Origin: Octopus sinensis
Taxonomy: Eukaryota
Assembly (NCBI RefSeq): GCF_006345805.1
Contig: NC_043022.1
Location: 22,258,001 to 22,322,000 of the forward strand
Length of the DNA stretch: 64,000 bases
Direction of reading: 5' to 3'
Shown here: positions 18,685-43,406 of the stretch, one piece after another
How positions within the stretch are numbered: position 1 is the first letter of the stretch
Layout of the letters: every line of letters starts with the position of its first letter
Program-made: the position numbers and the translations under genes
Notes under the pieces: model-generated
The model's input: only the letters and a program-made list of their open reading frames with translations
What the model was told of the DNA's origin: nothing
The model's database searches: none

Positions 18685-18860
18685 TTACAAACAAATCATG
18701 AAGTCAAGATCTTCAATCTGATTCTGTAAGACTTTCAGTTCTGCAAAATGGCTTTCTCTGTTGCCATTTGTTTCAGTGTTGTTGTTGTCATTGTTGTGTA
18801 GGCTGAAAACAGATTCTATGGAACCAGCATCACCGATATCAGGAACATTCAGGTTTCCTT
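18685..18860 (-). CDS. CW-PWWP-ARID gene last exon
   Basis: ctgttag|AA...LQNQIEDLDFMICL-TAA. The summed CDS from the ATG at 43366 is 2145 nt, divisible by 3. Confidence 0.65.
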
Positions 18861-19169
18861 CTAACAGGATCAGTAGATATAGATGATTAGATATGGAGAA
18901 AGATAGAGAGAGAGAGACAACATAAACAAGGAGAAATAAAGAGAGAGAGATATCTTCATCATTGTTTTAACCACTACTTTTCCATGTTTGCATGATTCAG
19001 AAGAAATTCAGTGAGACAGAATTTCTGAGGCAGGATGCTATTCCTGTTGCCAACCCTCACACAGATAGTGACATATCAATTATAAATGCAGATACTTGAG
19101 GAAAAAATTGGTAAACAGAGATTAAGTAAAACAGTGCAAATAGTGTGTGGTGTAATAGACGATAAATTA

Positions 19170-19690
19170 CATTTCATGGGCAAAACATTTTGAGGAGAGA
19201 TATGCAAGGCAAATAATTTTTTGTGGATAATACAGTCAATCTGTTTGGCACAGATTGGTTAGAACTATTTTATTTATGGCAACTCCCCATAAATCTTTAC
19301 TGCAGTAACATAAATGGTTGTCCTGTTAAAAACAAGTCTTCGGAAGAACTGAAGAAAAAAATTGAAAAAAATGTCCCCACAAGTGTTATCAAAGGATTTA
19401 GGTCTATGTAGAAAGATGGAAGCCTATTTCCAAGTAGGTGAAAACGCTGTGCCTGTACTTAGAGCAAACAAAAAAGTGCCATTCGCAGCAATTGAAACCG
19501 TAAATGGTTGGACAGACTTGAAAAGGGCAGAGTCATCAAAAAGGTGGATTACTCAAGGTGGGCAGCTCCCACAGTATGTATTAAAAAAAAAAAGATTAGA
19601 CTGTGTGCCAATTTCTCTACAGGATTGAATGACTGCTTAAAAACATACTGCAGAAGACATTTTTTTCAATTTGCAAGAGAAATGAGCAGC
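19170..19690 (+). mobile_element. Degenerate Ty3/Gypsy pol fragment (protease-RT)
   Basis: NLFGTDW, KVPFAA and KKVDYSRWAAPTVCIKK..IRLCANFSTGLNDCL across frameshifts. Confidence 0.75.
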
Positions 19691-19699
19691 AGTACAGCT

Positions 19700-20050
19700 A
19701 CAGAATGAAGGCAGCACTGGCTAAGAAAGAGTTACTTGAGCCAGAACCATTAACACTTATTTGTACTGTGTAGGAACAGTATTCTGCATTTAGGACATAT
19801 ACTAAATGCAGAATTGACAATACAATTGAAAGTGACACTTGCAAGGTGTGTGGTGATAAAGGTGAGATTGTAAGGTATATTGTGAATGAGTACACAAAGC
19901 TGGCCCCAAAAGAAGACATGATAGTGTTGCAAAAGTGATTCTTTGTGAGCTGCGTGACAAGTATAGATTGAAGAAGGCAAATATGTGTTACAGGAAACTC
20001 AGGAGTAATTAAGGATGACAACGTAAAGATACTGTAGGCTGTAGTGTCTA
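19700..20050 (+). mobile_element. Degenerate R4/NeSL-like non-LTR C-terminal zinc-knuckle fragment
   Basis: CKVCGDKGEIVRYIVNEYTKLAPKE, then HDSVAKVI after a frameshift. Confidence 0.5.
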
Positions 20051-20407
20051 AAATGATGATGAAATTCAACATGCAAAGCTGGATATAGAGGTTGTGAATA
20101 AAGAGGGGGGGCGTGTTTAAACATAAATATTGCATGCCCTGCTGATGCCGGTGAATTAGAAAAAGAAGAAAATCAGGTCAGACATGATGTGATAGGGAAA
20201 TATAAAGACTGTGGTCATTGAAAGTGAATGTTATACTGTAAGTACCAAGATTACAAACTTGCTTGAAAAGAGAAGGGTAAATGTGCATGAATCCTCCACG
20301 GAATTCTTGAAATCTGAATGAAGAGTGTAACCTAAGTCCACTGGTTATGGACAGCTGACCCTTTATTACATTTTCCACTGAAGTTGCAGTAAGTACCAAG
20401 ATTACAA

Positions 20408-20862
20408 GTAGAGACTTCAAACTTGAAATCTTCAAAGCCACAGTCGAACCAATTCTACTATATGGCTCAGAAACCTGGACGTTATCAAAGAAGCTTGAGA
20501 GGCATTTGGATGGAACCTACACTCGCCTCCTTATGAGAGCTCAAAATCTCTTGTGAAAGCGCCATCCAACCAAAATGCAAATATATGGGAAACTATCACC
20601 TGTGTCATCTCTTGTGAAAGGTAGGAGAGTCCAGTTTGCTGGACATTGTTGTAGAACTGAAAAAGAGGTAATTTCTACTCTCCTCCTCTGGAAGCCATCT
20701 ACTCGCAATGCCAGAGGGCGCACACTCTCCTACCCTGATGTAATCTCCAGGGATACAGGCATCCAGCAACAGAACCTCCGCAATGCCATGATGGACCGTG
20801 AAGTCAGGCGTAGCATGGTAAATTCCATTGTCTCAACCACGGTCGAACAATGATGATGATGA
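20408..20862 (+). mobile_element. RTE-type LINE 3' end with (TGA)n tail. Family copies at 27528-28020, 36530-36776, 52384-52895
   Basis: IFKATVEPILLYGSETW...FAGHCCR. TSD agattacaa. Confidence 0.88.
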
Positions 20863-21108
20863 AGATTACAAACTTGCTTGAAAAAAAAAAGGGAAAATGT
20901 GCATGAATCCTCCACAGAGTTCTTGAAATCTGAATGAAGAGTGTAACCTAAGTCCACTGGTTATGGACAGCTGACAACTTTATTACATTTTCCACTGAAG
21001 TGCTGTATAATGATGATTGATGATGATTGATGGTTTACATAATGATGATTGATGATTTACAATAAAAGACTGAATCAATGATTTGAATACAAGTAAAATC
21101 TCTCTCAC

Positions 21109-21252
21109 CTTCTGTATAAGTTGTAAAATTCTCTATAGATGTTATGTCCCCTAAAAGGATCTGGTAGTCAGTGTCAGGAGTGCGGTAAGAGCTGGGATCA
21201 ATGTAGTCTCTTAAATTTGCTCTTACTTTGTTTTCAGTTTCTTGAAATATTT
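21109..21252 (-). CDS. CW-PWWP-ARID gene C-terminal exon
   Basis: ctttcag|AA...G|gtgaga. Open within ORF 21035..21481. Confidence 0.65.
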
Positions 21253-22440
21253 CTGAAAGACATAACTTGATGTTATTTAAATTTAACACTGGACAAACAT
21301 TCATTTCTACCAAATACAGATGGGACTGTTGACATCTCCCCCTTGTGAAGCCAACTTCACACAGGAATTTGAACTCAAAGCATAAAGTAGTGGAGCTAAA
21401 TGCCTTGGAATCTACCCTGAAATCCAATTCACTCATCTCCCTTTCTCTTGTACAGTATGTGTGCCCTACCCTGGGGCCCACACTAATTATAATAGATCGT
21501 TACCACTATCGCCTTACTGGTACCTGTTCATCATTACCACCATCGCCTTACTGGCACCTGTGCCGGTGGCATGTGTAAAAAGATTCGAGCGAGGTCGTTG
21601 CCAGTACCGCCTGACTGGCCCCCGTGCAGGTGGCACGTAAAAGCACCCACTACACTAATGGTTGGCATTAGGAAGGGCATCCAGCTGTAAAAACTCTGCC
21701 AGCTCAAGATTGAAGCCTGGTGCAGCCATCTGGTTGGCCAGCCCTCAGTCAAATCATCCAACCCATGCTAGCATGGAAAGCGGACGTTAAACGATGATGA
21801 TGATGTTATCATTTTAATCAAAGTCAATGTCATGGTCATCACCGCCAAAAAGGACCTGCAGCAGCAATGACACCATCATCAAAGTTACTATCACATCCTC
21901 ATCATCATCATTTTATATTTTTTCCATACTGATAGGCGTAGGAGTGGCTGTGTGGTAAGTAGCTTGTTTACCAACCACATGGTTCCGGGTTCAGTCCCAC
22001 TGCGTGGCACCTTGGGCAAGTGTCTTCTACTATAGTCTCGAGCCGACCAAAGCCTTGTGAGTGGTTTTGGTAGACGGAAACTGAAAGAAGCCCATCGTAT
22101 ATATGTATATATATGTATATGTGTGTGTATATGTTTGTGTGTCTGTGTTTGTCCCCCCAACATCACTTGACAACCGATGCTGGTGTGTTTACGTCACCGT
22201 AACTTAGCGGTTCAGCAAAAGGGACCGATAGAATAAGTACTGGGCTTACAAAGAATAAGTCCTAGGGTCGATTTGCTCGACTAAAGGCGGTGCTCCAGCA
22301 TGGCCACAGTCAAATGACTGAAACAAGTAAAAGAGTATACAGGCTGGATGTGTCACCCACAATGGTCCTGTCTTCCATTCCGCTATGGCAATTCGTCTTG
22401 CAGTGTGTGAATACAAAACAAACTACCAGTGGCAACTTAC

Positions 22441-22509
22441 CATATTCAAACTGATAAGAGGTACTGTATTGATCCACCAACATGAAATGTTCCAATATGG
22501 CTGGAGTAT
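22441..22509 (-). CDS. CW-PWWP-ARID gene C-terminal exon
   Basis: atttcag|AT...G|gtaagt. Phase 1-1 and open. Confidence 0.65.
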
Positions 22510-22552
22510 CTGAAATAACTGTAACAGAAAACAATAACAAGATTATGTTTAA

Positions 22553-22772
22553 CCCTTTAGTGTATAAACTGGCCAAATCCGGCCCAATATATTTACATAT
22601 TTTATATTCAAACTGGCCATATCTAGCCTCTCACACCAAACCTACATTGACAGTCTAAAAATAAACAATCACATCATTGAAACCTCAAAGCTATAAGGTA
22701 ATGCATGATTAATTCAAAACAATTTAAATAAAAAAGCATTACATTTAACAGAGTAATCTGAACACTAAAGGG
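22553..22772. mobile_element. piggyBac-type MITE. Others at 31323-31762 and 40077-40297
   Basis: TTAA|CCCTTT...AAAGGG|TTAA termini. Confidence 0.8.
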
Positions 22773-22994
22773 TTAAAGAATAATGATATAATCACATATG
22801 TAATGCGGAAGGGATCAAATAAATCATGGCAAATTAACTTGGAAGCACCTCCACATATCTTTGGCTAAACAGATTACTCCGAAAGAATGTATTCCAGCTA
22901 GTTCAACTGATCAGTACAGCAGTCCATACAGAGGCAAAGAGTTGTTTACTGGTCTTGTCATGGGTATAATGTAAACCTGAGTATACTTCAAAGG

Positions 22995-23340
22995 TGGTGG
23001 TGGTGACCCCCTTCGGTCAGACACTGACCATGGGTTTGCACCTAGAGAGTTACTCTCTGAGGCACAAGTCTGGGCAAGGTTGTTTTATGGAAGACCAGCA
23101 GTCGCCCATGCATACCGGCTTCCCCTCTCCACGTCACCGATGTTGTCCAAGGGAAAGGCAAAGGGGCCGATACAGCTTGGCACCTGTGACGTCGCAACTC
23201 ATTTCTACAGCTGAGTGAACTGGAGCAACGTGAAATAATGTGTCTTGCTCAAGAACACAACACGCAGCCCGGCCCGGGATTCGAGCTCACAACCTCACGA
23301 TCGTAAGCTCAACGCTCTAACCACTGAGCCATGCGCCTTC
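22995..23340 (-). mobile_element. tRNA-derived SINE family D (3' part also at about 29885-30055, + strand)
   Basis: tRNA-like head GGCTCAGTGGTTAGAGCG...CTCGAATCCC and a CTTGAGCAAGACAC CORE-like segment. Confidence 0.8.
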
Positions 23341-23699
23341 ACATCAAAGGTATTATGCAGTATATCATTTATTAAACAAAAACAAATGGATAATTCAAAA
23401 CATCACTACACACGTTTCAGTAGCATAGTTTATTCTCAAATATTAAGTCAATTACATAACTTATTAGATTACATTAAATAAATCCTATTGTTATATAACC
23501 ACTCAATTTCATCAGGTGATATTCTGTCAAATATTTTGGTGAAATACAATGAATCTATGAGGGAAGAGACAGTCGCCCAGCAACAAAATTTGCTAAGGGG
23601 GTGCAAACTCAGGTCCTAATTTTTTTATGAAAAATGTGGATTTTTTCCAATGTTAAAATTAAAACAAATACAGGTATAATAATAATTTTTATTATTATG

Positions 23700-24100
23700 A
23701 GGGTCGGCTGAAATGTTCATAATCTGAGCAAGACACTCTCAATGGAATGTGACGAAATGAAGTTTATTTTCAAACATAGTTCCTCTTACTGTCCACACAC
23801 TTCCATTAGTAGTTGCAGTGCTTGGGTCGCACTGGTGAAGAAGCTTTTCTCTTGATCAAAATGGTCATCAACAACAGATAATATGTTCTCATCATAGTGA
23901 TACTGGTGCTCAGCTGAGTGTTTTTCTATGGTGGGAAACAGATGATAACCAGAAGGAACCAAATTTCTAACATAGGGAGGATGATCAACCAGTTCAAAGC
24001 CAGTCACACACAGCAGCCATTGAAACCAAGGACTTGTGTGCTGAAGCATTGTCCTAATGAAACAAGACCCCATTCATCAGTTTTTCTGGGTGTTTGGTCT
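23700..24100 (-). mobile_element. Degenerate mariner transposase fragment
   Basis: VDHPPYVRNLVPSGYHLF resembles HPPYSPDLAPSDYHLF. Confidence 0.7.
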
Positions 24101-24505
24101 TGATAGCCTTTCATAACTGCCTTAGGAAGTTGGTATTGAAATTTTCCATTGATGGTGTGATCATTTTGAAGATAGCCAATAAACACAATATTTTTTGCAT
24201 TAATGCATAGTATATATAATAATGTGAAGTATATTTTGCATATTAAAATGTTTAATTTTGGAAATGTATCAAGCAGAGCTAAAATAAGCAGTAAAAATAC
24301 AAATTGCAAGTATTTCAAAATGTGGGACACTACATAACAAAAATGAACAAAAAAAAGGGGGAAGAAAATAGTGGTGTTTGTGTTCCAAAGGTATAATGAG
24401 AAGGCTCAGGAGAAGGATAGAGAGATGGGGTAGAGGGAAGGAAGTTAGAAGGAATGAAAAGTGAAAAGATAAACTGGGGATCTGAAATGAGTACAAGGCA
24501 GGAAA

Positions 24506-24543
24506 TTGGCCCCTGTGCCAATATATATATATATGTATATATA

Positions 24544-24620
<77 letters not shown>

Positions 24621-24623
24621 ATA

Positions 24624-24663
<40 letters not shown>

Positions 24664-24705
24664 TATATATATATATGTGTGTGTGTGTGTATGTATATAT
24701 ATATC
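24506..24705. repeat. (TA)n/(TG)n microsatellite block (similar blocks at about 30057-30210, 32445, 50760)
   Basis: Directly visible in the sequence. Confidence 0.95.
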
Positions 24706-24717
24706 CAAAAAATGGAA

Positions 24718-25113
24718 CAAGAACGCAACAGACGATAATAAAACATCAAGACAGATAGACAATACAAAGACAGATAGGAAAAACCAGGGACAGGTCATTC
24801 GCAACCTCCTCTCATCAGTCGAGTTACCAAATTATCCTTACAGTTTTGACCAGAGACTTCAAATGTGTCTGGCCCCAAAAATCTAAGTTAAGAGCATTAA
24901 ATTTTTGGGGAGAAAACATTTAATGCTCTTAACTTAGATTTTTGGGGCTAGCCAGATTTGAACAGTCTCAAGTGTAACCGGCCGAAACTGTAAGAATAAT
25001 TTGGTAACTTGACTGGTGAGAGGAAGCTCCAAATGACCCATCCTTGTTTTTGCCTGTCCGTCTTTGTATCATCTATCTGTCCGGTTGTTTAATTATTGTC
25101 TGTTGCGTTCTTG
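24718..25113. mobile_element. About 400-bp imperfect fold-back element with a 31-bp perfect central stem
   Basis: CAAGAACGCAACAGAC...GTCTGTTGCGTTCTTG ends. Central inverted repeat at about 24872-24948. Confidence 0.75.
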
Positions 25114-25356
25114 AGGTGTTGACTCTAAATTCTATAGAATATCAATAGAGATAAACTTATATAGATATGAGAGACAGGGAGAAATATAAATATATCTATA
25201 AAATTTATAAATGTTTCATATGCAAAAATCTGGCAGAATAATGAAATAAAAGATGTGAAAATAATGATGAAGCTGATGATGAAGATTGTGGTGATGGTAG
25301 TAGCGGTGGCAGTGACTAACATAGAAGTAAGAGGAATAGGAAGGTCTTTGCCTTAC

Positions 25357-25502
25357 CATCTGAAGCACTGTATTTAGTAAGGTTGTTGTTATTGTTCAAC
25401 CATCCTGCAGGTACTTTTCTTTTACTTTTTGTCTTTGGCTGTGTAGTATCATGTCGGATTTTAACATTTCCAGATTTGTAGATTTCATATGCAAGGAGAT
25501 TC
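25357..25502 (-). CDS. ARID domain end plus basic stretch
   Basis: (R)NLLAYE completes the ARID domain. KTKSKRK is an NLS-like basic patch. Donor G|gtaagg. Confidence 0.8.
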
Positions 25503-25624
25503 CTGATAGTAGATGTGGTAAATGTACTGGTAATTATCGCTGACATAACATTAGGGACAATGTCAGTAAGAAAAAAAATCCATGGAAAATGAAGATGACA
25601 CACTTCTAGCAAAAACTGTAGTTA

Positions 25625-25658
<34 letters not shown>

Positions 25659-25991
25659 AGAACAATACTAAGAAAAGACTGAGAATGCATCAAAATTTTT
25701 TAGATACACATATCTGTTTTTGTACTTAAAACATGTTCAATTTTTTAACATAAGGGAAAATAATTTTGTTTTATATATTAATATGTATACTCTCTTTTCC
25801 TTGTTTCAGTCATTTGACTGTGGCCATGCTGGAGCGGCGCCTTTAGTCAAGCAAATCAACCCCAGGACTTATTCTTTGTAAGCCTAGTACTTATTCTATC
25901 GGTCTCTTTTGCCGAACCACTAAGTTACGGGGATGTAAACACACCAGCATCGGTTGTCAAGCAATGTTGGGGGGACAAACATAGACACACA

Positions 25992-26047
<56 letters not shown>

Positions 26048-26805
26048 CAACTGGCTTCTTTCAGTTTCCATCTACCAAATCCACTCACAAGGCTTTGGTT
26101 GGCCTGAGGCTATAGTAGAAGACACTTGCCCAAGATGCCACACAGTGGGACTGAACCCGGAACCATGCGGTTCGTAAGCAAGTTACTTACCACACAGCCA
26201 CTCCTATGGCTATGGAAATAAAAATACAAAAGCTTAACTGAAAATATATTGGTATATACATCCATATGATAAGTTTGACTCAGAATTTGAACTCAGAACG
26301 TAACAGCAAACAAAATACCGCAAAGCATTCCGCACAGCGTGCTAACGATTCTGCCAGCTCGCCGCTTTACTAACTAATCCTCTAAATATTACTACAGTGG
26401 AACATTCACTGATCCCATTATCCAACTGGTAGAGGGCTGTGAGTGCCTGATGATACTCTTGATGGGCATTACAGTGACCTAACCTGAAAATAGATGTGAA
26501 CACAGCCAGTTTCCAAGTAATGATAGTTGACTCTATAGAATGCTTCAGACTGATCCAAATTGATCAGAGCCCCACCAAAGCCTGCTTTCATCGCTGCCCT
26601 CTCTATGATGTTTCACATAAGGTGGAGGTTGTCAAGGGTAGATCTGTGTGAGATCATACACATTTGTGCTTCCCCAACGGCAGTTTTCCATGATTTATAC
26701 ACAATTTCTTTACAAAAATAACAGAACTGATGTCAAATGTGGCTTAGCCAGCCATAACAACAACAACAACAACAACAAAAAGGACAGGCAGAAATAATAG
26801 GGTAC

Positions 26806-26900
26806 CTTTCATAATAGCTTCGGGCAACACGACCTCTGTTTTTCTGTAAAGTATTTGTTACCTCACGGTATATAACAGCCCACTTCATTTTTTCTGTTAC
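26806..26900 (-). CDS. ARID domain, middle exon
   Basis: VTEKMKWAVIYREVT...RSYYER matches the ARID W and YxxY motifs. Junctions ttacag|...AG|gtaccc. Confidence 0.85.
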
Positions 26901-28195
26901 CTGTAATGGTAGATATTGGTAGAACAGTAAGTAAATGAAGCACACACATACAGGTGGTATCAGAAAAATCCCAGACTAGTTCTGTAGTGTACTAAAAGGT
27001 GGCAGCACACAGTTGCATGTGCAGTGAGAGCTAGCAGTGACCTTCAAAAGGGTGTTTTCCGAGTGGCATCACTGTGATTACTTTGCAAATTGTGAAATTT
27101 GTTATTTTGTTATCATATGTATGCGGTAGTCTGTGATTTTGTCATGGACAGGAAGTTGGAACAAAGAACCAACATGAAATTTTGCATTAAACTTGGAAGT
27201 ATAGGCGTAGGAGTGGCTGTGTGGTAACTAGCTTGCTTACAAACCACATGGTTCCGGGTTCAGTGCCACTGCGTGGAACCTTAGGCAAATGTCTTCTACT
27301 ATAGCCAGGAAGTTTGCATTGGTGTCAAAAGGATTAAAATAAGGAAGAATATATTGATAATGGCAAATGTCTTCTACTGACCAAAGCCTTGAGTAGATTT
27401 GGTAGATGGAAACTGAAAGAAGCCCATTGTATATATATATATCATCATCATCATCATCATCAATTAACGTCCGCTTTCCATGCTAGCATATATATATATG
27501 TATAGAAAGGGTATGGCCTGGTCAGCCTGTAATGACATGCATAAGATCTAGTCATCAAATCTAAGTAGAGACTTCAAACTTGAAATCTTCAAAGCCACAG
27601 TCGAACCAATTCTACTATATGGCTCAGAACCCAGGACGTTATCAAAGAAGCTTGAGAGGCGGTTGGATGGAACCTACACTCTCCTCCTTATGAGAGCTCA
27701 AAATCTCTTGTGGAAATGGCATCCAACCAAAATGCAAATATATAGGAAACTACCACCTGTGTCATCTCTTGTGAAAGGTAGGAGAGTCCAGTTTGCTGGA
27801 CATTGTTGTAGAGCTGAAAAAGAGGTAATTTCTACTCTTCTCCTCTGGAAGCCATCTACTCGTACTACCAGAGGGCGCACACTCTCCTACCCTGATGTAA
27901 TCTCCAGGGATACAGGCATCCAGCAACAGGACCTCCGTAATGCCATGATGGACCGTGAAGTCTGGCGTAACATAGTAAATTCTATTGTCTCGACCACGGT
28001 CGACACAATGATGGCGATGATGTATATGTGTGAGTATATATATATATATGTATGTGTGTATATATGTTTGTGTGTCTGTGTTTGTCTCTCCAACATCGAT
28101 TGACAACCAATGCTGGTGTGTTTACGTCTCTGTAACTTAGCGGTTCGGCAAAAGAGACCGATAGAATAACTACTAGGCTTACAAAGAATAAGTCC

Positions 28196-29880
28196 TATAC
28201 GACAAAGTTGCACAGCATGACAGAGGAAGGTACATCAGTACCAATGAGGCATTTTGGTGCATCTTCAATTTTCCCATTCATGAGAGGCACTCAGCCGTCA
28301 TTCATCTGAGTGTCCATCTAGAGAATGGCCACAGGGTTATTTTTATAAAACAAACAGCCTTGCAACAAGCACTTTCTCCAAAAGAAACTAACCTTTTAAG
28401 TTGTGTGAAGTAGATGAAGATGCAAGAAAACTCCTTTATCTACAACTAGCAGTATCGCCCGGCATTGCTCAGGTTTGTAAGGGAAATAACTATATAAGCA
28501 TTTTTAGAGAGTTATTTCCCTTATATAAACCGAGCAAAAATGCATTAAAAATGCGATAAAATGATGGTAAATTTTTTTTTTAAATCGTAGACTCATCGTA
28601 GACGCAAGCTAATGCCCAGAAGGGCTCGATATGAATCACGACTATAAGATACCCGCTTTTGGTTAAACTGCACTGCAAAATGTGGGAGTAGTTAGGAATC
28701 TAAATTGGAGGAGACAGACTCTCACACACACAACTTCAGTTTTATATATAAAGATTACCCAAGTATTACACCTGGAAAAACAATAAATGGCACAAGAGGA
28801 AATGTGGAGCTGACATTCTTGCAAGAGTTTACAGTGTCTACCCAAGCCAAGCAGAATGTTACTACTTACGGCTCCTTTTGCATTAAGTACGCGGTCCCAA
28901 ATCATTCCAAGATTCAAGGAGGGTAAATGGTCATGTGTGTGAAATTTATAGGGCAGCCTGCTATCAAAAATGTTTTCAGAAAATGATGAGAATTGGGACT
29001 TTGCATTGACTGGAGCATCAGTATCAGATTCTCCAAGGAAACTTTGTAACTTTTTTGCAGTTATACTGAACATGTGTCAACTTTGCAGATGAAACATCAT
29101 GAGGATATAGCTGAAGATTTAAAGTATGCAATTCAATAGGCAAACCCAGATATCAATATTCAGTTCTCTGAAACAATTTTAAACCAAGCACTGATTGAAA
29201 TTGATGATCAAGTTCTGGCTATGGGAGGCAAAAATTTGCAAGAGTTTGGCTCTGGACTGCCAAAAACAAATTGTCAAATTAGTGATTTAATTTCAAGACA
29301 TAGCAAGAGAGAAAAATTATGAAATCACACGTTGGCTGCATTTGTGAATGAACATGAACCTAATCTTCTTCCAGAACAATGTTGTACATATGATAAAATT
29401 ATTTCGTCAGTCAGAAAAAAAAGCAGAGGAATTTTGTTTTGAAGCGCCTGGTGGCACAGGTAAAACATTTGTAACATCATTGCTTCTCTCCAAGGTGAGG
29501 CAACAAAAAAGAATTGCAGTTGCTGTAGCATCATCTGGTGTTCCTTCCACCTTTCTCCCAAAAGGAAGAACAGCTCATTCTGCTTTTAAAATCCTGCTAA
29601 ACCTGGTCACAAATGACAGTCCAATTTGTAACATAAGCTAAGGTTCAGGTTCAGCAGAAGTGTTGTGCCAATACCACCTGATCATTTGGGATGAATGCAC
29701 CGTGTTACATAGAGATGCAATGGAAGCTCTTGATAAGACCTTACAGGACATAAGAGGCAATAATAAATCTATGAGAGGAGTTGCATTAGTTTTATCAGGA
29801 AACTTCAGACATTACCAGTCATTCTGAAACAAACAAGATCTGATGAAATAAAAGCATGCATTAAGTCTTCATACCTATGG
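28196..29880 (+). mobile_element. Degenerate Helitron RepHel (PIF1 helicase) relic
   Basis: GRYISTNEAFW..FPIHERH..HLSVHLENG, APGGTGKTF (Walker A), GRTAHSAFK and IIWDEC, with stops and frameshifts. Confidence 0.85.
28444..28755 (+). mobile_element. HINE/DINE-1-like element nested in the Helitron relic (related copy at 59004-59385)
   Basis: AACTAGCAGTATCGCCCGGC start and TTTATATATAAAGAT end. Confidence 0.65.
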
Positions 29881-30089: not shown

Positions 30090-30208
<119 letters not shown>

Positions 30209-30303: not shown

Positions 30304-30456
30304 ATTGTTATAACCGCCTGCATCTAGTACCACACAGTAGAACTGGTATGGATCAATAGTGATATTTTCCCACACTGCGACCTCAAGGTCCATATTGTTG
30401 AAAGTCAGGAACTTTTTCAAATCCACTGAAAAATCTGCTTCATGTCTGTGGTAATT
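30304..30456 (-). CDS. ARID domain, N-terminal half
   Basis: FSVDLKKFLTF...IDPYQFYCVVLDAGGYNN matches the ARID pattern FxxxLxxF...IDLYxxYxxVxxxGGY. Junctions ttatag|...|gtaagt. Confidence 0.85.
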
Positions 30457-31927: not shown

Positions 31928-32097
31928 CTCTATATCTTGTGTCAGTTTTTCTTCCAAACTCATGCTTAGTGTAGGGTTCTTTGTAAAGCGAGTCATTACT
32001 GTTGTACTGTTACTCTGATTCACCTTGATGTTCGGGTCACTACACGGGCGCCGCGGGGTCTTTGGGTAGCCAGATGCCTCATAGACTGTAGAAGTAC
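31928..32097 (-). CDS. CW-PWWP-ARID gene linker exon
   Basis: atctgtag|GT...GAG|gtaact. 56 open codons, phase 1-0, fits both neighbours. Confidence 0.7.
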
Positions 32098-32439: not shown

Positions 32440-32487
<48 letters not shown>

Positions 32488-33714: not shown

Positions 33715-34195
33715 CTGATCCAACAGAACTACTCTCTATATATTCAGAGACAATGTTTTCTTCACTATCAAAGAAATGTTGCCTCTTAACAAGAGAGTGA
33801 CTACAATGGGTATAGCTTTCTTGTGCTCCTGTGTCCTGGAATTTTGCCGCCACGGTAACTGCAGCTGTTGTTGTTACTACTGGTGCTGTTGTTGTTGATG
33901 GTGCTGTTACTTGTGTCAATCTGGAGAGTTTGGGGTTATCACAACTAGATTCCAATATAGATCTATCATAGAAACTATGTTCTCCTTTTCTGGTGCTTGA
34001 AGTCATGGCCCTATTGTTATTGATGTTATTGTTTCCTATTTTGGTATTGTGTTCACTTCCAGTATAATTGAAGACACATCTTTTCAGTCTGACAGACTTG
34101 GACAACTTCTGAAAGATCTCTGCTTCTTTTAGGGCTCCTTGAATGCTGTTTCCTCTGAATGTGCTTTTATGACCCTTACTTTTAGGCATATACTT
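33715..34195 (-). CDS. PWWP C-terminal helix plus low-complexity linker exon
   Basis: IQGALKEAEIFQKLSKSVRLKRC resembles YKSALQEACLLYGYSHEQRLEMC. Junctions aaacag|...G|gtgagt. Confidence 0.8.
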
Positions 34196-36157: not shown

Positions 36158-36362
36158 CTTTAAAACTAATGATTGAGGGTTGCTATCTAACAAGTGAATA
36201 CAGCTGCTTGAAATCCAAGCATGAGAGTGAGGGGTGCCCAAGAACTCCACATGGTAACTGTCTACAACAATCTCTTCCATGTCCTTGTGTTTCCTTTGCT
36301 CTTCTTCCTGGTACTCAACGTATGTGTTATAGAATGGATCAAAACTTACAACAGCTGGCCAC
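36158..36362 (-). CDS. PWWP domain exon
   Basis: WPAVV...YHVEFLGTPHSHAWI resembles ZCWPW2 WPGIL...YHIEFLGDPHSRSWI. Junctions tttcag|...|gtaaga. Confidence 0.9.
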
Positions 36363-36429
36363 CTGAAATAATAACCCAGAATAAGAAAAGTTTTCATCCT
36401 TGCACTCCATCAATTAGCACAGCTATCAC

Positions 36430-37035
36430 TTCACACTCGCTCACAACATCATAAGCGGAAAGTGTAACCTCTCGAAAGAGCTGTTCTTCACTCCTGCTCC
36501 AGAGCGTGGGGTGCGGGGTCACTCCGAAAGGTAGGAGAGTCCAGTTTGCTGGACATTGTTGTAGAGCTGAAAAAGAGGTAATTTCTACTCTTCTCCTCTG
36601 GAAGCCATCTACTCGCAATACCAGAGGGCGCACACTCTCCTACCCTGATGTAATCTCCAGGGATACAGGCATCCAGCAACAGGACCTCCGTAATGCCATG
36701 ATGGACCGTGAAGTCTGGCGTAGCATGGTAAATTCCATTGTCTCGACCACGGTCGAACAATGATGATGATGATGATGTCACTCCGAAAAGCTCTATCTAT
36801 GACGATTTCATCTCAATCGAAGGAGAGGGGCTTTCTCCGTCCGGGTTGCGGATCCGTGGAATAAGCTGCCGGACGAGATAGTCAAGATGCCGACGACCGA
36901 TCGGATCAAAGTCTCTCTTGACTGGAAATGGCTGAGCTCTTTGTAAGACCGTCCTCCCTGTACATAACTCCCTGTCCCCTTACATGGCCTTGCTTTTGCT
37001 TTTTGAACCAATAAAAATTAAATTAAATTAAAAAT
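36430..37035 (+). mobile_element. CR1-like LINE 3' end interrupted by an RTE insertion
   Basis: 12-bp TSD gtcactccgaaa at 36518 and 36777. (AATTA)n tail. Confidence 0.85.
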
Positions 37036-38884
37036 TAAAAGTCATTTCAATAAACTTCAGTACCATTTTGATAAATTCAAGTTCCACTTCAATAAATATG
37101 AGTCAGTTCAATAAACTAGTGTCTGTTATATTGGTAAACAGGAACACCACTTCAATAAAGAAAGCACCATTTCAATGAATATGAGTGCCTAAATTTTGAT
37201 AAACTTGAGTGCCACTCCAAAAGACATAAATGTCAACTTCTGAGTATCAGTAAGTACCCCAGTTCTACAGACACATCCACACTCAAATGTACACAAAATA
37301 TTGCATACACAGATACATAAGCAGCAAACACAAAAATTGGATACACATAGGCGCAGGAGTGGCTGTGTGGTAAGTAGCTTGCTTACCAACCACATGGTTC
37401 CGGGTTCAGTCCCACTGCGTGGCACCTTGGGCAAGTGTCTTCTACTATAGCCTCGGGCCGACCAAAGCCTTGTGAGTGGATTTGGTAGACGGAAACTGAA
37501 AGAAGCCCGTCATATATATGTATATGTATATATATATGTGTGTGTGTGTGTGTGTCTGTGTTTGTCCCCCCAACATCGCTTGACAACCGATGGTGGTGTG
37601 TTTGCGTTCCCGTAACTTAGCGGTTCAGCTAAGGAGACCGATAGATTAAGTACTAGGCTTACAAAGAATAGGTCCTGGGGTCGATTTGCTCGACTAGAGG
37701 TGGTGCTCCAGCATGGCTGCAGTCAAATGACTGAAACAAGTAAATGAGTAAAAGAGTAAAGAGTATATAGAAACAGTAAACAAGTGTTGAAAATGGATAG
37801 TTTTGAAGGTAAGAACTGTTAAGTAATTTGAAGTAGTGCTTTGTCCAGTATCTACACTAAAGTAATAAGAAGCACATTGTTTACAAAGTACATTTTACAA
37901 TTTTTACGGTGCTTATAGCCTTATTTTGAACTTTTTGTTTTATTATTGTTGATATAATTCATTAACTGAATAATTGACATCATTTCACACCTCAAAGCTT
38001 AAATACACAGATATATATATATGTAATGTAATATGGTATACTACATTACATGTCACTGTTTTTAAATTGGGCATGACACAAAATCGAAATCAATCAACAT
38101 CAATAGCTGTGATACCAGTGCCGGTGGCACGTAAGAGAACCATCCGAACGTGGCCGTTGCCAGCACTGCCCCAACTGGCCTCCTTGCTGGTGGCATGTAA
38201 AAAGCACCATCCGATTGTGGCCGTTGCCAGCCTCGTCTGGCCCCCATGCCGATGGCACATAAAAAGCACCAACTGATCGTGGCCGTTTGCCAGCCTCGTC
38301 TGGCACCTGTGCAGGTGGCACATAAAAAGCACCCACTACACTCACGGAGTGGTTGGCATTAGGAAGGGCATCCAGCTGTAGAAACACTGCCAGATCAGAC
38401 TGGGCCTGGCGCAGCCTTCTGGCTTCCAAGACCCCAGTTGAACCGTCCAACCCATGCTAGCATGGAAAACGGACGTTAAACAATGATGATGATGATCCTC
38501 AGAGTTTTAGCTGATGGTACTGTAGAAATTGAAGTTTGTTGGTCTTGTTGCTGTCTTCATTATTTTTGCTTTTGCCTGCCTTTCTAGTTCTTTAGAGCAA
38601 GAGCTCTGAGGGGATTCTTACAACAATAAGAGCAACAACAAGACTTTTTGTACTCACATGTTGAACAGGGCACAGTTCCAATATGGCTTTATGGCTTTCA
38701 GCATTATTAATTTGTAGTGTGATGGAGGAAAGGGACAACAGAAAAAGAAGCAAACAGGAGAAAGAAATACAAAAGACCTTACCTCGGCGAAATCAGCAGT
38801 CTCTTTCACCAATTCAACATGTCTTGTCACTCTGCCGTCTGTGCTAGAACTGACCACACTTCCTCGCTGACCACGTGCTTCCTC

Positions 38885-39270
38885 CCACACATGCGCCTTT
38901 CACTCTTCTGCCGGCCCCTGCAAACCTTACTTCTGCCCACCTCATCTGTCGTCCTCTCCACCAACACCACATAGCTCATCACAGCCCATAACACTGCCAA
39001 CACCACACTTCCTGTCCATGCATGCGCCTTTCACTCTTCCGCCGGCCCCTGCAAACCTTACTTCTGCCCACCTCATCTGTCATCCTCTCCACCAACACCA
39101 CATAGCTCATCACAGCCCATAACACTGCCAACACCACACTTCCTGTCCATGCATGCACCTTTCACTCTTCCGCCGGCCCCTGCAAACCTTACTTCTACCC
39201 ACCTCATCTGTCATCCTTTCCACCAACACCACATAACTCATCACAGCCCATAACACTGCCAACACCACAT
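38885..39270. repeat. 131-bp tandem repeat, about 3 copies
   Basis: GC(G/A)CCTTT unit starts at 38893, 39024 and 39155. Confidence 0.92.
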
Positions 39271-40308
39271 AATTCTTGCAAATTCATTCTGTCACCCCCT
39301 CTTAGCCCTATTTTAACCACTCACCTATACTGCAATACAAAACTTATTACTAACCAAACATTTACATGGTTTCTGATCTCTCTTATCATCACTCTTCTAT
39401 TTCTTTGTACCATGTATTGGGACACAAATGTATAGAGGGAGGTATTCAGCTTAATCTGGTGAAAAATCTAGATCCTGTTTATTTACTCTAGTCATCAGGC
39501 TGTCTCACTGCATATCATGGAATGGTTGCTCCATGTAATATGCAGTAAGAGTGCTTAATGATTGAAGTAAACAGTCTTTGTTTTTATGCCAAAGTAAATG
39601 TCTCTTTAACATGAAACTAGAGTTGCTGTTTAAATTACCAAGTTATTGTATTTAAGACACACACACATTTACTACATATTAAAAACAAATATCACACACG
39701 GATAATGCAATTTCTTACAAATATCACACATGAAATATCATCATCATCACCTAATGTCCATTTGCCATGTTGGCATGGGTTGGCTGGTTTGACTGAGGTT
39801 GGGAGAGCCAGTAGCTGCACCAGGCTCCAATCTGATCTGGAAATGTTTCTACGGCTGGATGTCCTTCCTAATGCCAACCACTCTGAGAGTATAGTGGGTG
39901 CTTTTTACATGCCACTGGCACAGGAGCCAGTCAGGCAGGTCTGGCCTCGATCACATTCAGATAGTACTTTTTACATGCTACCGGCACAAATGTGTATAAC
40001 TGTGTATGTGTGTGTATGTGTGTGTGTGTGTGTGTACATATTTATACATACATGCATGATATGTAATACATTTTAACCCTTTTGTTACCAGCCCGGCCAA
40101 AACCGTCTCTGTCTCTGTAGTATAAATGTCTTGTTTTCATTAGTTTTTCATTAAAATATACCACCAAACCCTAGTCACAATTTATGATCCTAACACTAGC
40201 TTAATGATAACTAAGTTATTTTACTAAATTCTTTGTTATATTTAAAATAATTGAAAGAAACACAGAGCATCTCAAAATGAAAACGGTAATGAAAGGGTTA
40301 AACCTTAC

Positions 40309-40568
40309 CAACAGTAGCCTGCCATTATGGCCATCACCATATCTCCTGGGGTTAAATATGGATATACAAACACAATTCCCTTTTTACACATAGTTTCCTC
40401 AATGGATTCAAAATTATCTTCTTCGATATTGCAGTTATTCTTTGTCTGATCTTTGTTGAATTTGCAAATCCACTTCTTGTCATCACCACACCATCTGTGA
40501 ACTTCCTGCTTGCTCACACATCTCCATTTTAAGCAGCTATCACATTGGATCCAAGACATTCCTATGAT
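40309..40568 (-). CDS. zf-CW domain and start of PWWP domain exon
   Basis: WIQCDSCLKWR...WICKFNKDQTKNNC is a CW zinc finger with the cage Trp residues present. Followed by GDMVMAIMAGYCW. Donor TG|gtaagg. Confidence 0.9.
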
Positions 40569-40739
40569 CTGGGTTGGTAAATGACAAACAGAGATGACGG
40601 TTAATTAGTGACATAAATGATAGTGTTGGTGGAGGATGTGTTAGTGATAATGGGGATGGGAATGATGGTTGTATGTGAAGGTAGTAGTGCCGTTGTAACT
40701 GTTGTTGTTAGTGGTGGTGGAACAACATTAATACATATT

Positions 40740-41160
40740 GGGCGGCGAGCTGGCAGAAACGTTAGCACGCCGGGCGAAATGCTCAGCGGTATTTCGTCTG
40801 CGGCTACGTTCTGAGTTCAAATTCCGCTGAGGTCAACTTTGCCTTTCATCCTTTCGGGGTCGATAAATTAAGTACCAGTTACGCACTGGGGTCGATATAA
40901 TCGACTTAATACCTATGTCTGTCCTTGTTTGTCCTGTCTGTGTTTAGCCCCTTGTGGGTAGTAAAGAAATAGGTATTTCGTCTGCGGCTACGTTCTGAGT
41001 TCAAATTCCGCTGAGGTCAACTTTGCCTTTCATCCTTTCGGGGTCGACAAATTAAGTACCAGTTACGCACTCGGGTCGATATAATCGCCTTAATCCATTT
41101 GTCTGTCCTTGTTCGTCCCCTCTGTGGTAGTAGCCCTTTGTGGGTAGTAAAGAAATAGGA
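40740..41160 (+). mobile_element. SINE family B dimer (similar dimer at 51420-51830)
   Basis: The second unit starts after the AAAGAAATAG|GTATTTCG junction. Confidence 0.85.
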
Positions 41161-41191
41161 ACAACCTTAATACATATTTCATCAAACATAC

Positions 41192-41394
41192 CTCTTTTTC
41201 TTCCAACCCTTTCAGAGATAATTGTCTTCTCAGCTTTAATCCAGAATCTTTATCATTCTTACTTGAGTTTTTGACAATTGGGGCGTCACTCCAAGCCACA
41301 TTTTCGCTTGATTCTTCAGCAGCTGGAAGCAAATTAAGAATCTGTTCCTGGAGCTCATTGTTGAGATTTTCAAATATTTTCGGACTAGATAAGA
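41192..41394 (-). CDS. CW-PWWP-ARID gene exon (LSSPKIFENLNNELQEQILNLLP...)
   Basis: Open frame within ORF 41090..41404. Donor GAG|gtatgt. Phase fits the CW exon. The acceptor (aag) is less certain. Confidence 0.65.
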
Positions 41395-42622
41395 CTTGTT
41401 TCATGAAAGTAGAAAAAAAAAGAGATAATAAAAATGATTAGTTAGTTAGTTAATTTTTTGGCTCAAAAAGCAAAAAGCAAGGCCATGTAGGGGGACATGG
41501 AGTTATGTACAGGGTGGTGTTCATGTAAAGAGTTAGTCCAGGAGTAGTACAAGGGAGAGGTGTTTAGTCATGCTATATTAAACACCACCTCAGTATCTGA
41601 TTGGTGTTTATTGTATTGACCATCGGATCCCAAAGAAAGGGTGAAGGATAAAAAGGTGATGTTGATTTGAACTTAACATGACAGAAAGAAAGTAACTAAA
41701 TACTGTAATGTATTTAGTGCAATTCTTGGATCTTTTCGGTTTAAATGGCAGTTTTTTAAAATAATTTCCATGTAACTAAACACTTTTAAACTTCGTATAC
41801 TGGTAGAATGTGTTTATAAAACATCTTTTTCTCTTGGCTTTATTGAGAAAATTCTATAGTCTGTAAGATATTTGTTTTTTTTTTCTTCAATTTCTACAAT
41901 TTCAACCAATTAATGATGTCTATTGAGGTGAAAACATTCTGTGCCGTATGAATATGTCCCTCGTTTAAGAAATAGATTGGGTTTATTTACATTTCTGAAG
42001 AAAAAAGATACCCTTCACCCCACCCCTAACCCTAACCCTAAAACAGATTGAAATGCAATAGATCGATACTAGGGTCATAATTATGGGTGACAATTTCAGA
42101 TGACACTGCTAGAAAAAACTGCTGTCCAAACCGAAAAGATCCCTTATCTAGAAGGGAAGCTGCAGGCTGGACATAGACATAATGTTATATGAAAATGATG
42201 ATAAATGAGGGCAACAAGCAATGCCTGCCAATTGCTGCTTACCCAAGAACATTGCTCTTTTATATTTCATTTACAAGGCAACAAACCACTTACATTTTTC
42301 ACAATTCAATAACAAAAATGAGGCACTAAGCCTCTTACCTTTATTTTGAACTTTCATGCCTGACCAGGCTCCTCCTCTCATTCAAACACCTGGACAGTGC
42401 CAAGTCGGGCCACTTTAACATAAATCTAAAAGTGTCCTCGGGGAAGGAATTCATCACCCTGCACAAATCGGTTTCCCATATGACCTCCACAGCCACCTAT
42501 GAAAGCCAGTCAGGGTCGTCAGTGCAGGATAGAATCCCTTCCCTCCGGCCTTTCTTTTTAAACTTCTTAACGAAGCTTTCTAACGACCCTCCCTTATGGC
42601 AGAGGATCACAAATTCCTCATC

Positions 42623-43182
42623 CTTAGCATGGGAAGGGACTACAGTTTCTACCTTCGGTGACACAACTCCCACCAAAGGTGCCATGAGGCTTCTACCAAC
42701 CTGCAGCTACTAGCATGGGAAGGGCCTACAGTTTCTACCTTCGATGGCACAACTCCCACCAAAGGTGCCATGAGGCTTCTACCATCCTGCAGCTACTAGC
42801 ATGGGAAGGGCCTACAGTTTCTACCTTCGGTGGCACAACTCCCACCAAAGGTGCCATGAGGCTTCTACCAACCTGCAGCTACTAGCATGGGAAGGGCCTA
42901 CAGTTTCTACCTTCGGTGGCACAACTCCCACCAAAGGTGCCATGAGGCTTCTGCCAACCTGCAGCTACTAGCATGGGAAGGGCCTACAGTTTCTACCTTC
43001 GGTGGCACAACTCCCACCAAAGGTGCCATGAGGCTTCTACCAACCTGCAGCTACTAGCATGGGAATGGCCTACAGTTTCTACCTTCGGTGACACAACTCC
43101 AACCAAAGGTGCCATGAGGCTTCTACCAACCTGCAGCTACTAGCATGGGAAGGGCCTACAGATTCTACCTTCGGTGGCACAG
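42623..43182. repeat. 86-bp GC-balanced minisatellite, about 6.5 copies
   Basis: CTGCAGCTACTAGC recurs at 42701, 42787, 42873, 42959, 43045 and 43131. Confidence 0.95.
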
Positions 43183-43323
43183 CCACATTAGTTTGTGATA
43201 AAAAAGTGTTTTGAATATTTTTTAAACACTTAAGTGTTAATATTAATTAACATAAACCTGGAACTAACTTAATTTTTCTTTTTCTTCAAGGACTAGTCAA
43301 GGGAGGACATATTACAGACTTAC

Positions 43324-43406
43324 CTGTTTTCTTCCAAAATCGAGTGACAACTTTCTTAAGATCCATATGTTCACAGCTCACTGTACTATAATATCCCGAC
43401 TGATCT
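43324..43406 (-). CDS. CW-PWWP-ARID gene, putative exon containing a candidate ATG at 43366 (MDLKKVVTRFWKKT)
   Basis: ttctttgtag acceptor and G|gtaagt donor. Frame-compatible with the next exon. An upstream exon was not identified. Confidence 0.55.

What the first reader, a model, noticed from the sequence alone, without database searches (positions are those of the whole stretch)
18685..43406. ZCWPW-like chromatin reader fused to an ARID DNA-binding domain (CW-PWWP-ARID)
Seen: 12 frame-consistent GT-AG exons encode a CW finger (WIQCDSCLKWR), a ZCWPW2-like PWWP domain (YCWWPA...YHVEFLGTPHSHAW) and a full ARID domain spread over three small exons not obvious from the ORF track (FSVDLKKF...IDPYQFY...GGYNNVTEKMKW...YYERNLLAYE). 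Known: vertebrate ZCWPW1/2 read H3K4me3 and H3K36me3 at PRDM9 meiotic hotspots, and as far as I know they have no ARID domain. Inference: this protein combines dual histone-mark reading with its own DNA-binding domain. It may be an ancestral or lineage-specific architecture relevant to recombination-hotspot or germline chromatin control in molluscs.
Basis: partly seen in the sequence, partly recalled or inferred. Interest (0 to 1): 0.8.

Follow-up and report, generated by a model that had tools for sequence, protein, structure and literature searches.

The report
Octopus ZCWPW2 gene with ancestral ARID domain
This is a real 12-exon octopus gene for a histone-mark reader of the ZCWPW2 type that also carries an ARID DNA-binding domain. 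That three-domain layout is an old, widespread animal form of ZCWPW2 that lampreys and jawed vertebrates lack, not a mollusc invention.

Summary
Twelve GT-AG exons on the minus strand (43366..18685) splice into a 716-717 aa protein. It is identical to RefSeq 'uncharacterized protein LOC118768051 isoform X2' of Octopus sinensis, apart from a 3-nt alternative acceptor at exon 12. Pfam finds zf-CW, PWWP and ARID, all above the curated cut-offs. The ARID lies on exons 7-9, and its AlphaFold model superposes on the KDM5A ARID at 1.6 Å.

The layout is neither new to databases nor mollusc-specific. Named CW-PWWP-ARID proteins occur in cnidarians, annelids, a nemertean, other molluscs, echinoderms, hemichordates, amphioxus and the hagfish Eptatretus burgeri, where the protein is named ZCWPW2.

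In a CW-PWWP tree, all 21 ARID-bearing proteins group with vertebrate ZCWPW2 and away from ZCWPW1 (94.5% bootstrap). The gene is therefore best read as the octopus ZCWPW2 orthologue in its ancestral long form. The ARID is absent from lamprey and jawed-vertebrate ZCWPW2.

I found no paper that describes an ARID in ZCWPW2.

Histone and DNA binding, and any meiotic or PRDM9-linked role in octopus, are inferred and were not tested. Interest is moderate.

The parts
43324..43406 (-). Exon 1. The acceptor is at 43406 and the ATG at 43366. It encodes MDLKKVVTRFWKKT.
   Evidence: Matches the N-terminus of P0001.
41192..41394 (-). Exon 2, N-terminal region (aa 15-82).
   Evidence: AG/GT boundaries, phase 1 in and phase 0 out.
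40309..40568 (-). Exon 3: the CW zinc finger (WIQCDSCLKWR...WICKF...NNC; Pfam zf-CW aa 88-133) and the start of the PWWP (GDMVMAIMAGYCW).
   Evidence: The four Cys and the KWR motif are invariant in family alignment A1.
36158..36362 (-). Exon 4: the PWWP core (WPAVVSFDP...YHVEFLGTPHSHAWI).
   Evidence: Pfam PWWP covers aa 157-263.
33715..34195 (-). Exon 5: the conserved helices after the PWWP (ALKEAEIFQKLSKSVRLKRCVF), then a low-complexity linker.
31928..32097 (-). Exon 6: linker plus the first half of a conserved long helix that precedes the ARID (LSMSLEEKLTQDIE).
   Evidence: The long donor at 31928 is the one used in P0001. The helix is predicted with pLDDT above 90.
30304..30456 (-). Exon 7: ARID part 1 (NYHRHEADFSVDLKKFL...IDPYQFYCVVLDAGGYNN).
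26806..26900 (-). Exon 8: ARID part 2 (VTEKMKWAVIYREVTNTLQKNRGRVARSYYE).
25357..25502 (-). Exon 9: the end of the ARID (RNLLAYEIYKSG) and a basic tail (KTKSKRK).
22441..22518 (-). Exon 10 (VISDTPAILEHFMLVDQYSTSYQFEY). It enters in phase 1, like exon 6, so skipping exons 6-9 keeps the frame.
   Evidence: The O. vulgaris model P0002 joins exon 5 directly to this exon.
21109..21252 (-). Exon 11. Read-through of its donor gives the alternative end GERDFTCIQIIDSVFYCKSSIIIM* (down to about 21035).
18685..18860 (-). Exon 12. It has tandem acceptors at 18860 and 18857. It encodes the conserved 'VPD' motif and the C-terminal helix HFAELKVLQNQIEDLDFMICL, then the stop codon.

Best explanation
The region is the octopus (most likely Octopus sinensis) orthologue of the histone-mark reader ZCWPW2, in an ancestral long form. 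Its layout is: N-terminal region, CW finger, PWWP, linker, long helix plus ARID, then a C-terminal 'VP[DE]' motif and a terminal amphipathic helix.

Shown here: the gene structure, the three domains, the ARID fold, the wide distribution of the same layout across animals, and the grouping with vertebrate ZCWPW2 rather than ZCWPW1.

Inferred mechanism: a multivalent nucleosome reader.
- The CW finger binds H3K4me3. The aromatic residues W/W/F line up with those of human ZCWPW2 CW.
- The PWWP binds H3K36me3 and nearby DNA. The Y, W and F cage positions are kept.
- The ARID adds direct DNA contact through its helix-turn-helix, which would raise affinity or dwell time on marked nucleosomes.
- The conserved C-terminal helix recruits partner proteins.

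By analogy with mouse ZCWPW2, the likely setting is meiotic chromatin marked by PRDM9. This was not tested for octopus.

The ARID is absent from lamprey and jawed-vertebrate ZCWPW2 and retained in hagfish. ARID-less models in Lottia, Nucella and O. vulgaris suggest that a short isoform made by in-frame exon skipping may also exist.
For: - Gene model: 12 GT-AG exons with consistent phases, identical to RefSeq P0001.
- Domains: zf-CW, PWWP and ARID are all above the Pfam cut-offs.
- ARID fold: the AlphaFold model has mean pLDDT 86.7. Its best PDB match is the KDM5A ARID, rmsd 1.6 Å over 91 columns, followed by other ARIDs.
- Same layout elsewhere, confirmed by Pfam: Saccoglossus, Branchiostoma, Montipora, Nematostella, hagfish ZCWPW2, Mizuhopecten and Acanthaster.
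- Same layout elsewhere, by family HMM and source names: Ptychodera, Amphiura, Apostichopus, Tubulanus, Owenia, Capitella, Haliotis, Physella, Elysia, Bulinus, Patella, Babylonia and Potamilus.
- Transcript-like evidence: a 2201-nt Logan contig from Montipora carries one uninterrupted ORF with all three domains.
- Phylogeny: in an NJ tree on 154 CW-PWWP columns with 122 representatives, the split between {all 21 ARID+ proteins plus vertebrate ZCWPW2} and {ZCWPW1-like} has 94.5% of 200 bootstraps. There is no ARID on the ZCWPW1 side.
- Profile searches: the family profile retrieves only proteins named ZCWPW2. It scores the ZCWPW2 CW structure at 1.6e-17 and the ZCWPW1 CW at 4e-10.
- Conservation: CW and PWWP key residues are conserved across the family, and so are the C-terminal motifs.
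- Function in mouse: ZCWPW2 reads H3K4me3 and H3K36me3 at PRDM9 hotspots, is needed for break formation and binds HORMAD1, IHO1, MEI4 and REC114 (bioRxiv 10.64898/2026.05.22.727067).
- PRDM9 in invertebrates: PRDM9 with fast-evolving fingers is reported in Nematostella, Lottia and Capitella (PMC2779102).
Against: - No octopus transcript was seen here. The octopus fusion rests on the RefSeq model, the frame logic and cross-species conservation.
- The O. vulgaris model lacks the ARID exons.
- The tree is distance-based, on a short alignment, and uses only sequences recovered with the octopus query. Inside the ZCWPW2-side clade the support is low (vertebrate ZCWPW2 monophyly 14%), and octopus sits on a long branch.
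- Histone binding, DNA binding and germline expression were not tested.
- Whether octopus has PRDM9 or a ZCWPW1 paralogue could not be checked with these tools.
- The C-terminal resemblance to jawed-vertebrate ZCWPW2 is by eye only. The family C-terminal HMM did not reach them at E < 0.01.
Confidence: 0.78

Rival explanations
1. Annotation chimera: the ARID exons (6-9) belong to a separate gene, or are only computationally joined to the CW-PWWP exons.
For: No octopus transcript was examined. The O. vulgaris model P0002 omits the ARID exons. The Argonauta model P0008 starts shortly before the ARID and has no CW-PWWP.
Against: The same CW-PWWP-ARID order is predicted independently in more than 20 species from 8 phyla. 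In Montipora it sits on a single uninterrupted 2.2-kb ORF contig. The phases are compatible at every octopus junction. A conserved helix spans the exon 6/7 junction. The conserved C-terminal motifs that follow the ARID in octopus also follow it in all relatives.
Confidence: 0.04
2. A mollusc- or cephalopod-specific domain-shuffling event that added an ARID to a ZCWPW gene.
Against: The layout is present in cnidarians, ambulacrarians, amphioxus, hagfish, annelids and a nemertean. The ARIDs of these proteins form one family that a single HMM recognises at E values of 1e-17 to 1e-51.
Confidence: 0.02
3. The protein is a ZCWPW2-clade member but works as a general, not specifically meiotic, chromatin or transcription co-regulator in octopus. 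In this reading the ARID targets it to promoters or repeats, independently of PRDM9.
For: Nothing here ties the octopus gene to the germline. ARID and PWWP proteins are mostly general chromatin regulators. NCBI named two gastropod orthologues 'ARID4B-like'. A 2026 NAR paper (PMC12828234, title and abstract only) also assigns mouse ZCWPW2 a role in transcriptional regulation.
Against: In vertebrates, ZCWPW2 presence tracks PRDM9 (PMC8892340). Its knockout phenotype is meiotic. PRDM9 has been reported in three of the invertebrate genera that carry this family: Nematostella, Lottia and Capitella.
Confidence: 0.25

Closest known systems
Vertebrate ZCWPW2 (zinc finger CW-type and PWWP domain containing 2)
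   Same: It has a CW finger immediately followed by a PWWP, with the aromatic-cage positions kept. The octopus CW's best solved match is the human ZCWPW2 CW (4o62). It lies on the same side of the ZCWPW1/ZCWPW2 split (94.5% bootstrap). Hagfish ZCWPW2 has the same CW-PWWP-ARID layout.
   Different: Lamprey and jawed-vertebrate ZCWPW2 (about 300-410 aa) have no ARID. The octopus protein is 716 aa, with a long low-complexity linker, a pre-ARID helix, an ARID and extra C-terminal exons.
ZCWPW1
   Same: The same CW-PWWP dual-reader module.
   Different: It falls on the other side of the main split in the tree. None of the 73 ZCWPW1-side representatives has an ARID. The family profile scores the ZCWPW1 CW (2e61) much lower than the ZCWPW2 CW.
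KDM5/JARID1 ARID domain
   Same: It is the best sequence and structure match for the octopus ARID. Sequence: 2jrz 1.8e-9, 2jxj and 5ceh. Structure: 5ceh rmsd 1.6 Å at 32% identity.
   Different: The octopus protein has no JmjN, JmjC or PHD domains. With the family profile, ARID5B, Dead ringer, ARID3A and ARID4A score as well or better, so there is no specific subfamily link.
ARID4A/B (RBBP1) PWWP-ARID cassette, PDB 7v8n
   Same: A PWWP followed by an ARID in one chain. The family profile's match to ARID4A also covers part of the helix before the ARID. NCBI named the Physella and Patella orthologues 'ARID4B(-like)'.
   Different: There are no Tudor/RBB1NT or chromobarrel hits. The ARID4A PWWP is not matched by the family profile; only the ARID stretch is. 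Identity in the structural alignment is 17-18%. ARID4 has no CW finger.

Membership tests
ZCWPW2 (ZCWPW family) | CW-type zinc finger with four Cys and the conserved Trp residues | tested here: met
   Pfam zf-CW scores 33.9 bits against a cut-off of 27.5. C9, C12, C35, C46, K14, W15, R16 and W33 are invariant in A1. The best solved match is the ZCWPW2 CW, 4o62.
ZCWPW2 (ZCWPW family) | PWWP domain directly after the CW, with an aromatic cage | tested here: met
   Pfam PWWP scores 50.3 bits against a cut-off of 25.6. GY..WP and YHVEF.G are conserved. The assignment of cage positions by analogy with LEDGF and NSD2 is from my own knowledge.
ZCWPW2 (ZCWPW family) | Groups with ZCWPW2 rather than ZCWPW1 | tested here: met
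   The NJ split has 94.5% of 200 bootstraps. The family profile retrieves only proteins named ZCWPW2. ZCWPW2 CW scores 1.6e-17 and ZCWPW1 CW 4e-10. The method is distance-based on 154 columns, and no synteny was checked.
ZCWPW2 (ZCWPW family) | Binds H3K4me3 and H3K36me3 | not testable with these tools
   Needs peptide or nucleosome binding assays.
ZCWPW2 (ZCWPW family) | Germline or meiotic expression and co-occurrence with PRDM9 | not testable with these tools
   No octopus genome or transcriptome search was available. PRDM9 is reported in Lottia, Capitella and Nematostella (PMC2779102) but was not checked for octopus.
ARID/BRIGHT DNA-binding domain | Sequence match to the ARID profile | tested here: met
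   PF01388 scores 47.0 bits against a cut-off of 24.1, covering profile positions 3-89 of 89.
ARID/BRIGHT DNA-binding domain | ARID helical fold | tested here: met
   AF2 pLDDT is 86.7. The top 16 Foldseek hits are all ARID domains, the best at rmsd 1.6 Å.
ARID/BRIGHT DNA-binding domain | Binds DNA | not testable with these tools
   Needs EMSA or nucleosome binding assays.
ARID4A/B (RBBP1) | Tudor/RBB1NT and chromobarrel domains, and an ARID4-type PWWP | tested here: not met
   No such Pfam hits. Only the ARID part of 7v8n is matched by the family profile.
KDM5/JARID1 | JmjN, JmjC, PHD and C5HC2 domains around the ARID | tested here: not met
   None was found at E <= 1.

The most novel reading that the evidence does not exclude
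The ancestral eumetazoan ZCWPW2 was a three-way nucleosome reader (H3K4me3, H3K36me3 and DNA through its own ARID) with a conserved C-terminal partner-binding helix. It was produced as ARID-containing and ARID-skipping isoforms. In invertebrates that have PRDM9, the ARID helps hold the protein, and through it the break-forming machinery, at hotspots. Lampreys and jawed vertebrates kept only the short form.
Probability: 0.25. Interest if true: 0.65.

Novelty: new variant of a known kind. Interest (0 to 1): 0.45.

Why it matters
ZCWPW2 has recently been proposed in mouse as the link between PRDM9's histone marks and the machinery that makes meiotic breaks. The studies read or text-searched here treat it as a CW-PWWP protein.

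This work shows that the long CW-PWWP-ARID form is the widespread form outside lampreys and jawed vertebrates. It runs from corals to hagfish and carries conserved C-terminal motifs. That gives three things:
- a concrete hypothesis that ancestral ZCWPW2 had its own DNA contact;
- a marker for ZCWPW2 orthology in invertebrates, where the proteins are now named 'uncharacterized', 'ZCWPW1' or 'ARID4B-like';
- testable constructs (with and without the ARID) for asking how dual-mark readers engage nucleosomes.

It does not by itself show anything about recombination in octopus.

Tried and rejected
- My first gene model used a short exon 6 (donor at 32024) and went from exon 9 straight to exon 12. 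I replaced it after comparison with P0001: long exon 6 with the donor at 31928, plus exons 10 and 11.
- The search for homologous proteins with the ARID alone returned nothing. With the full protein it returned only 2 hits, and with the profile only 8. These look like limits of the word index. The exhaustive representative search gave the family.
- A paper search using 'ARID' was swamped by climate papers.
- The look-up of encoding contigs has no record for P0001, so I obtained no octopus contig or transcript.
- The Biopython NJ run with bootstraps timed out. I rewrote it in numpy.
- I considered and rejected membership of ARID4 and of KDM5.
- I considered and rejected a mollusc-specific origin.
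- A tRNA scan of the window found nothing.
- The family C-terminal HMM did not reach jawed-vertebrate ZCWPW2. That similarity remains an impression only.


Full report
**What is in the sequence.** The window is AT-rich and repeat-laden, with short exons separated by long introns, which is typical animal DNA. A first 10-exon model already gave Pfam hits to zf-CW (aa 88-133, 33.9 bits), PWWP (157-263, 50.3 bits) and ARID (47.0 bits, profile positions 3-89 of 89). All three are above the curated cut-offs. The best database match, P0001, is RefSeq 'uncharacterized protein LOC118768051 isoform X2 [Octopus sinensis]', 716 aa, whose precomputed domains are the same three.

**Final gene model.** Comparison with P0001 showed that exon 6 uses a more distal donor (31928) and that two small exons, 10 and 11, lie between exon 9 and the last exon. 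The final model has 12 coding exons from 43366 to 18685. Every internal junction is AG...GT and the phases are consistent. Its translation equals P0001 except for one extra Glu. That difference comes from a tandem acceptor (TAG|AAG) at exon 12, 18860 versus 18857.

**The three domains.**
- CW finger. Its best solved relative is the human ZCWPW2 CW (4o62, 3e-7). The two Trp of 'W.QC' and 'KWR' and the Phe after 'EED' line up with it.
- PWWP. It is closest to the NSD2 and NSD3 N-terminal PWWP domains. It keeps GY..WP and YHVEF.G, the positions that form the methyl-lysine cage in other PWWPs. The cage assignment is my own knowledge, by analogy with LEDGF Y18/W21/F44.
- ARID. It is encoded by exons 7-9. 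As a single sequence it is closest to KDM5/JARID1 ARIDs (1.8e-9). An AlphaFold model built with a 25-sequence family alignment has mean pLDDT 86.7. It shows a long N-terminal helix, a beta hairpin and five helices. Its top 16 PDB matches are all ARID domains, led by KDM5A at 1.6 Å rmsd over 91 columns.
- ARID subfamily. With the family profile, ARID5B, Dead ringer, ARID3A, ARID4A and KDM5 all score between 1e-15 and 1e-20. The domain is a bona fide ARID with no clear subfamily link.

**Distribution of the layout.** An exhaustive HMMER search of 1.84 billion cluster representatives gave 274 hits. Scanning the best 150 locally with the octopus segments, and with a family ARID HMM, showed 22 or more representatives that combine CW and/or PWWP with the ARID. 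Source names place them as follows:
- Hemichordates: Saccoglossus and Ptychodera.
- Echinoderms: Acanthaster, Amphiura and Apostichopus.
- Cephalochordate: Branchiostoma.
- Hagfish: Eptatretus burgeri, named 'Zinc finger CW-type PWWP domain protein 2'.
- Molluscs: Mizuhopecten, Potamilus, Pinctada, Haliotis, Patella, Physella, Bulinus, Elysia, Babylonia and Argonauta.
- Annelids: Owenia and Capitella.
- Nemertean: Tubulanus.
- Cnidarians: Montipora and Nematostella.

Pfam confirmed all three domains in Saccoglossus, Branchiostoma, Montipora, Nematostella, the hagfish, Mizuhopecten and Acanthaster. A bat ZCWPW2 has only CW and PWWP. A 2201-nt assembled contig from a Montipora sequencing run carries one uninterrupted 564-codon ORF with all three domains. 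That is what a spliced transcript looks like. The fusion is therefore real and old, not a prediction artefact and not a mollusc novelty.

**Which ZCWPW it is.** I extracted the CW-PWWP region of 122 representatives and kept 154 aligned columns. I built a neighbour-joining tree with 200 bootstraps.
- The main split has 94.5% support. One side has 49 sequences: octopus, all 21 ARID-bearing proteins including the cnidarian ones, and vertebrate ZCWPW2 from lamprey, hagfish and gnathostomes.
- The other side has 73 sequences with no ARID. It includes P0073, whose CW matches the solved human ZCWPW1 CW at 1.4e-19.
- Independently, a profile of the family retrieved only proteins named ZCWPW2 from the 5.8-billion-protein index. 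It scores the ZCWPW2 CW structure seven orders of magnitude better than the ZCWPW1 CW.
- Resolution inside the ZCWPW2 side is poor, and octopus is on a long branch.

I conclude that this is the octopus member of the ZCWPW2 clade and that the ARID is an ancestral feature of that clade. Eptatretus keeps a full ARID. One Myxine isoform keeps only its first half. Lamprey and the 19 gnathostome representatives show none.

**Other conserved parts.** The family alignment shows three further conserved elements:
- helices after the PWWP (A..EA..L..LS.EERL..C.F);
- a conserved stretch before the ARID (SKEEKF..D.Q.Y..NE.AFE.D...FM), predicted as one long helix; in octopus it spans the exon 6/7 junction;
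- at the C-terminus, a 'VP[DE]' motif followed by a terminal amphipathic helix. Examples are HEMQALQ..ID.L in gastropods and annelids, and HFAELKVLQNQIEDLDFMICL in octopus.

Jawed-vertebrate ZCWPW2 ends in a similar-looking helix (KFNEIDALISEL in Myotis). A family HMM did not detect it, so that point is only an impression.

**Short forms.** The O. vulgaris model joins exon 5 directly to exon 10, which preserves the frame (phase 1 to phase 1), and ends by reading through the exon 11 donor. The Lottia and Nucella models (362 and 365 aa) have CW-PWWP and the family C-terminus but lack the ARID block. Lottia aligns to Haliotis at residues 7-299 and 561-646. These may be real ARID-skipping isoforms, about the size of vertebrate ZCWPW2, or incomplete predictions. 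I could not tell which.

**How it most likely works.** The domains and their conservation are shown here. Everything below is inferred. The CW finger would bind H3K4me3. The PWWP would bind H3K36me3 and nucleosomal DNA. The ARID would add a helix-turn-helix DNA contact. The C-terminal helix would dock partner proteins.

In mouse, ZCWPW2 reads both marks at PRDM9 sites, is required for double-strand break formation at hotspots, and binds HORMAD1, IHO1, MEI4 and REC114 (bioRxiv 10.64898/2026.05.22.727067). In vertebrates its presence tracks that of PRDM9 (PMC8892340). PRDM9 with rapidly evolving fingers was reported in Nematostella, Lottia and Capitella (PMC2779102). Zcwpw1 and Zcwpw2 were recently found in nearly all of 28 cnidarian genomes (bioRxiv 10.64898/2026.09.07.749791). 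A meiotic role for the octopus gene is therefore plausible but untested. I could not check whether octopus has PRDM9.

**Literature.** No paper in the library contains both 'ZCWPW2' and 'ARID domain'. The three ZCWPW/PRDM9 papers I text-searched do not mention an ARID, and the search counts show none in the 2012 survey of PWWP genes either. The cnidarian study searched with CW and PWWP profiles only. The layout is therefore visible in databases but apparently undescribed.

**Verdict.** It is a new variant of a known kind, of moderate interest.

Noticed in passing
window 29348-29827 (+), inside intron 7: Two adjacent ORF fragments match the PIF1-like helicase family (PF05970, 1.9e-17 and 2.3e-10). 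This is probably a decayed Helitron-type element lying antisense to the gene.
   Followed up: partly
window 45957-47303 (+): A reverse-transcriptase ORF (RVT_1, 1.6e-22) interrupted by stop codons. It is a non-LTR retrotransposon remnant just upstream of the gene.
   Followed up: partly
window 20575-20853, 27663-28103, 36506-36763, 52307-52879 (all +): Four copies of the same retroelement 3' end (peptide ...RTLSYPDVISRDTGIQQQDLRNAMMDREVWR...). All are in the same orientation, and three lie in introns antisense to the gene.
   Followed up: no
window 40788-41159 and 43868-44500, plus further copies across the window: A repeat unit of about 184 bp, sometimes in tandem (2.0 and 3.4 copies). Its core GTTCTGAGTTCAAATTCCGC occurs 16 times in the window against 0 expected. 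It looks like a SINE, but ARAGORN calls no tRNA.
   Followed up: partly
window 42625-43181 (intron 1) and 38890-39269 (intron 3): Clean minisatellites: 86 bp x 6.5 copies (97% matches) and 131 bp x 2.9 copies (97% matches).
   Followed up: no
window 18857-18860 (-): A tandem acceptor (TAG|AAG) at the last exon gives products that differ by one Glu: 717 aa versus the 716 aa of isoform X2.
   Followed up: yes
window 21035-21108 (-): Reading through the exon 11 donor gives GERDFTCIQIIDSVFYCKSSIIIM*. This is exactly the C-terminus of the O. vulgaris model P0002, so it is a possible alternative 3' end. P0002 also contains a second CW copy that has no counterpart in this window.
   Followed up: partly
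window 23786-24073 (-): An ORF with ...HPPYVRNLVPSGYHLFPTIEKH... resembles the C-terminal part of mariner-type transposases, from memory. Pfam gave no hit at E <= 0.01.
   Followed up: partly
P0019 (Lottia) and P0022 (Nucella), relatives and not in the window: Gastropod models of about 360 aa have CW-PWWP and the family C-terminus but lack the ARID block cleanly. Lottia aligns to Haliotis at 7-299 and 561-646. They are the size of vertebrate ZCWPW2, and are either short isoforms or incomplete predictions.
   Followed up: partly
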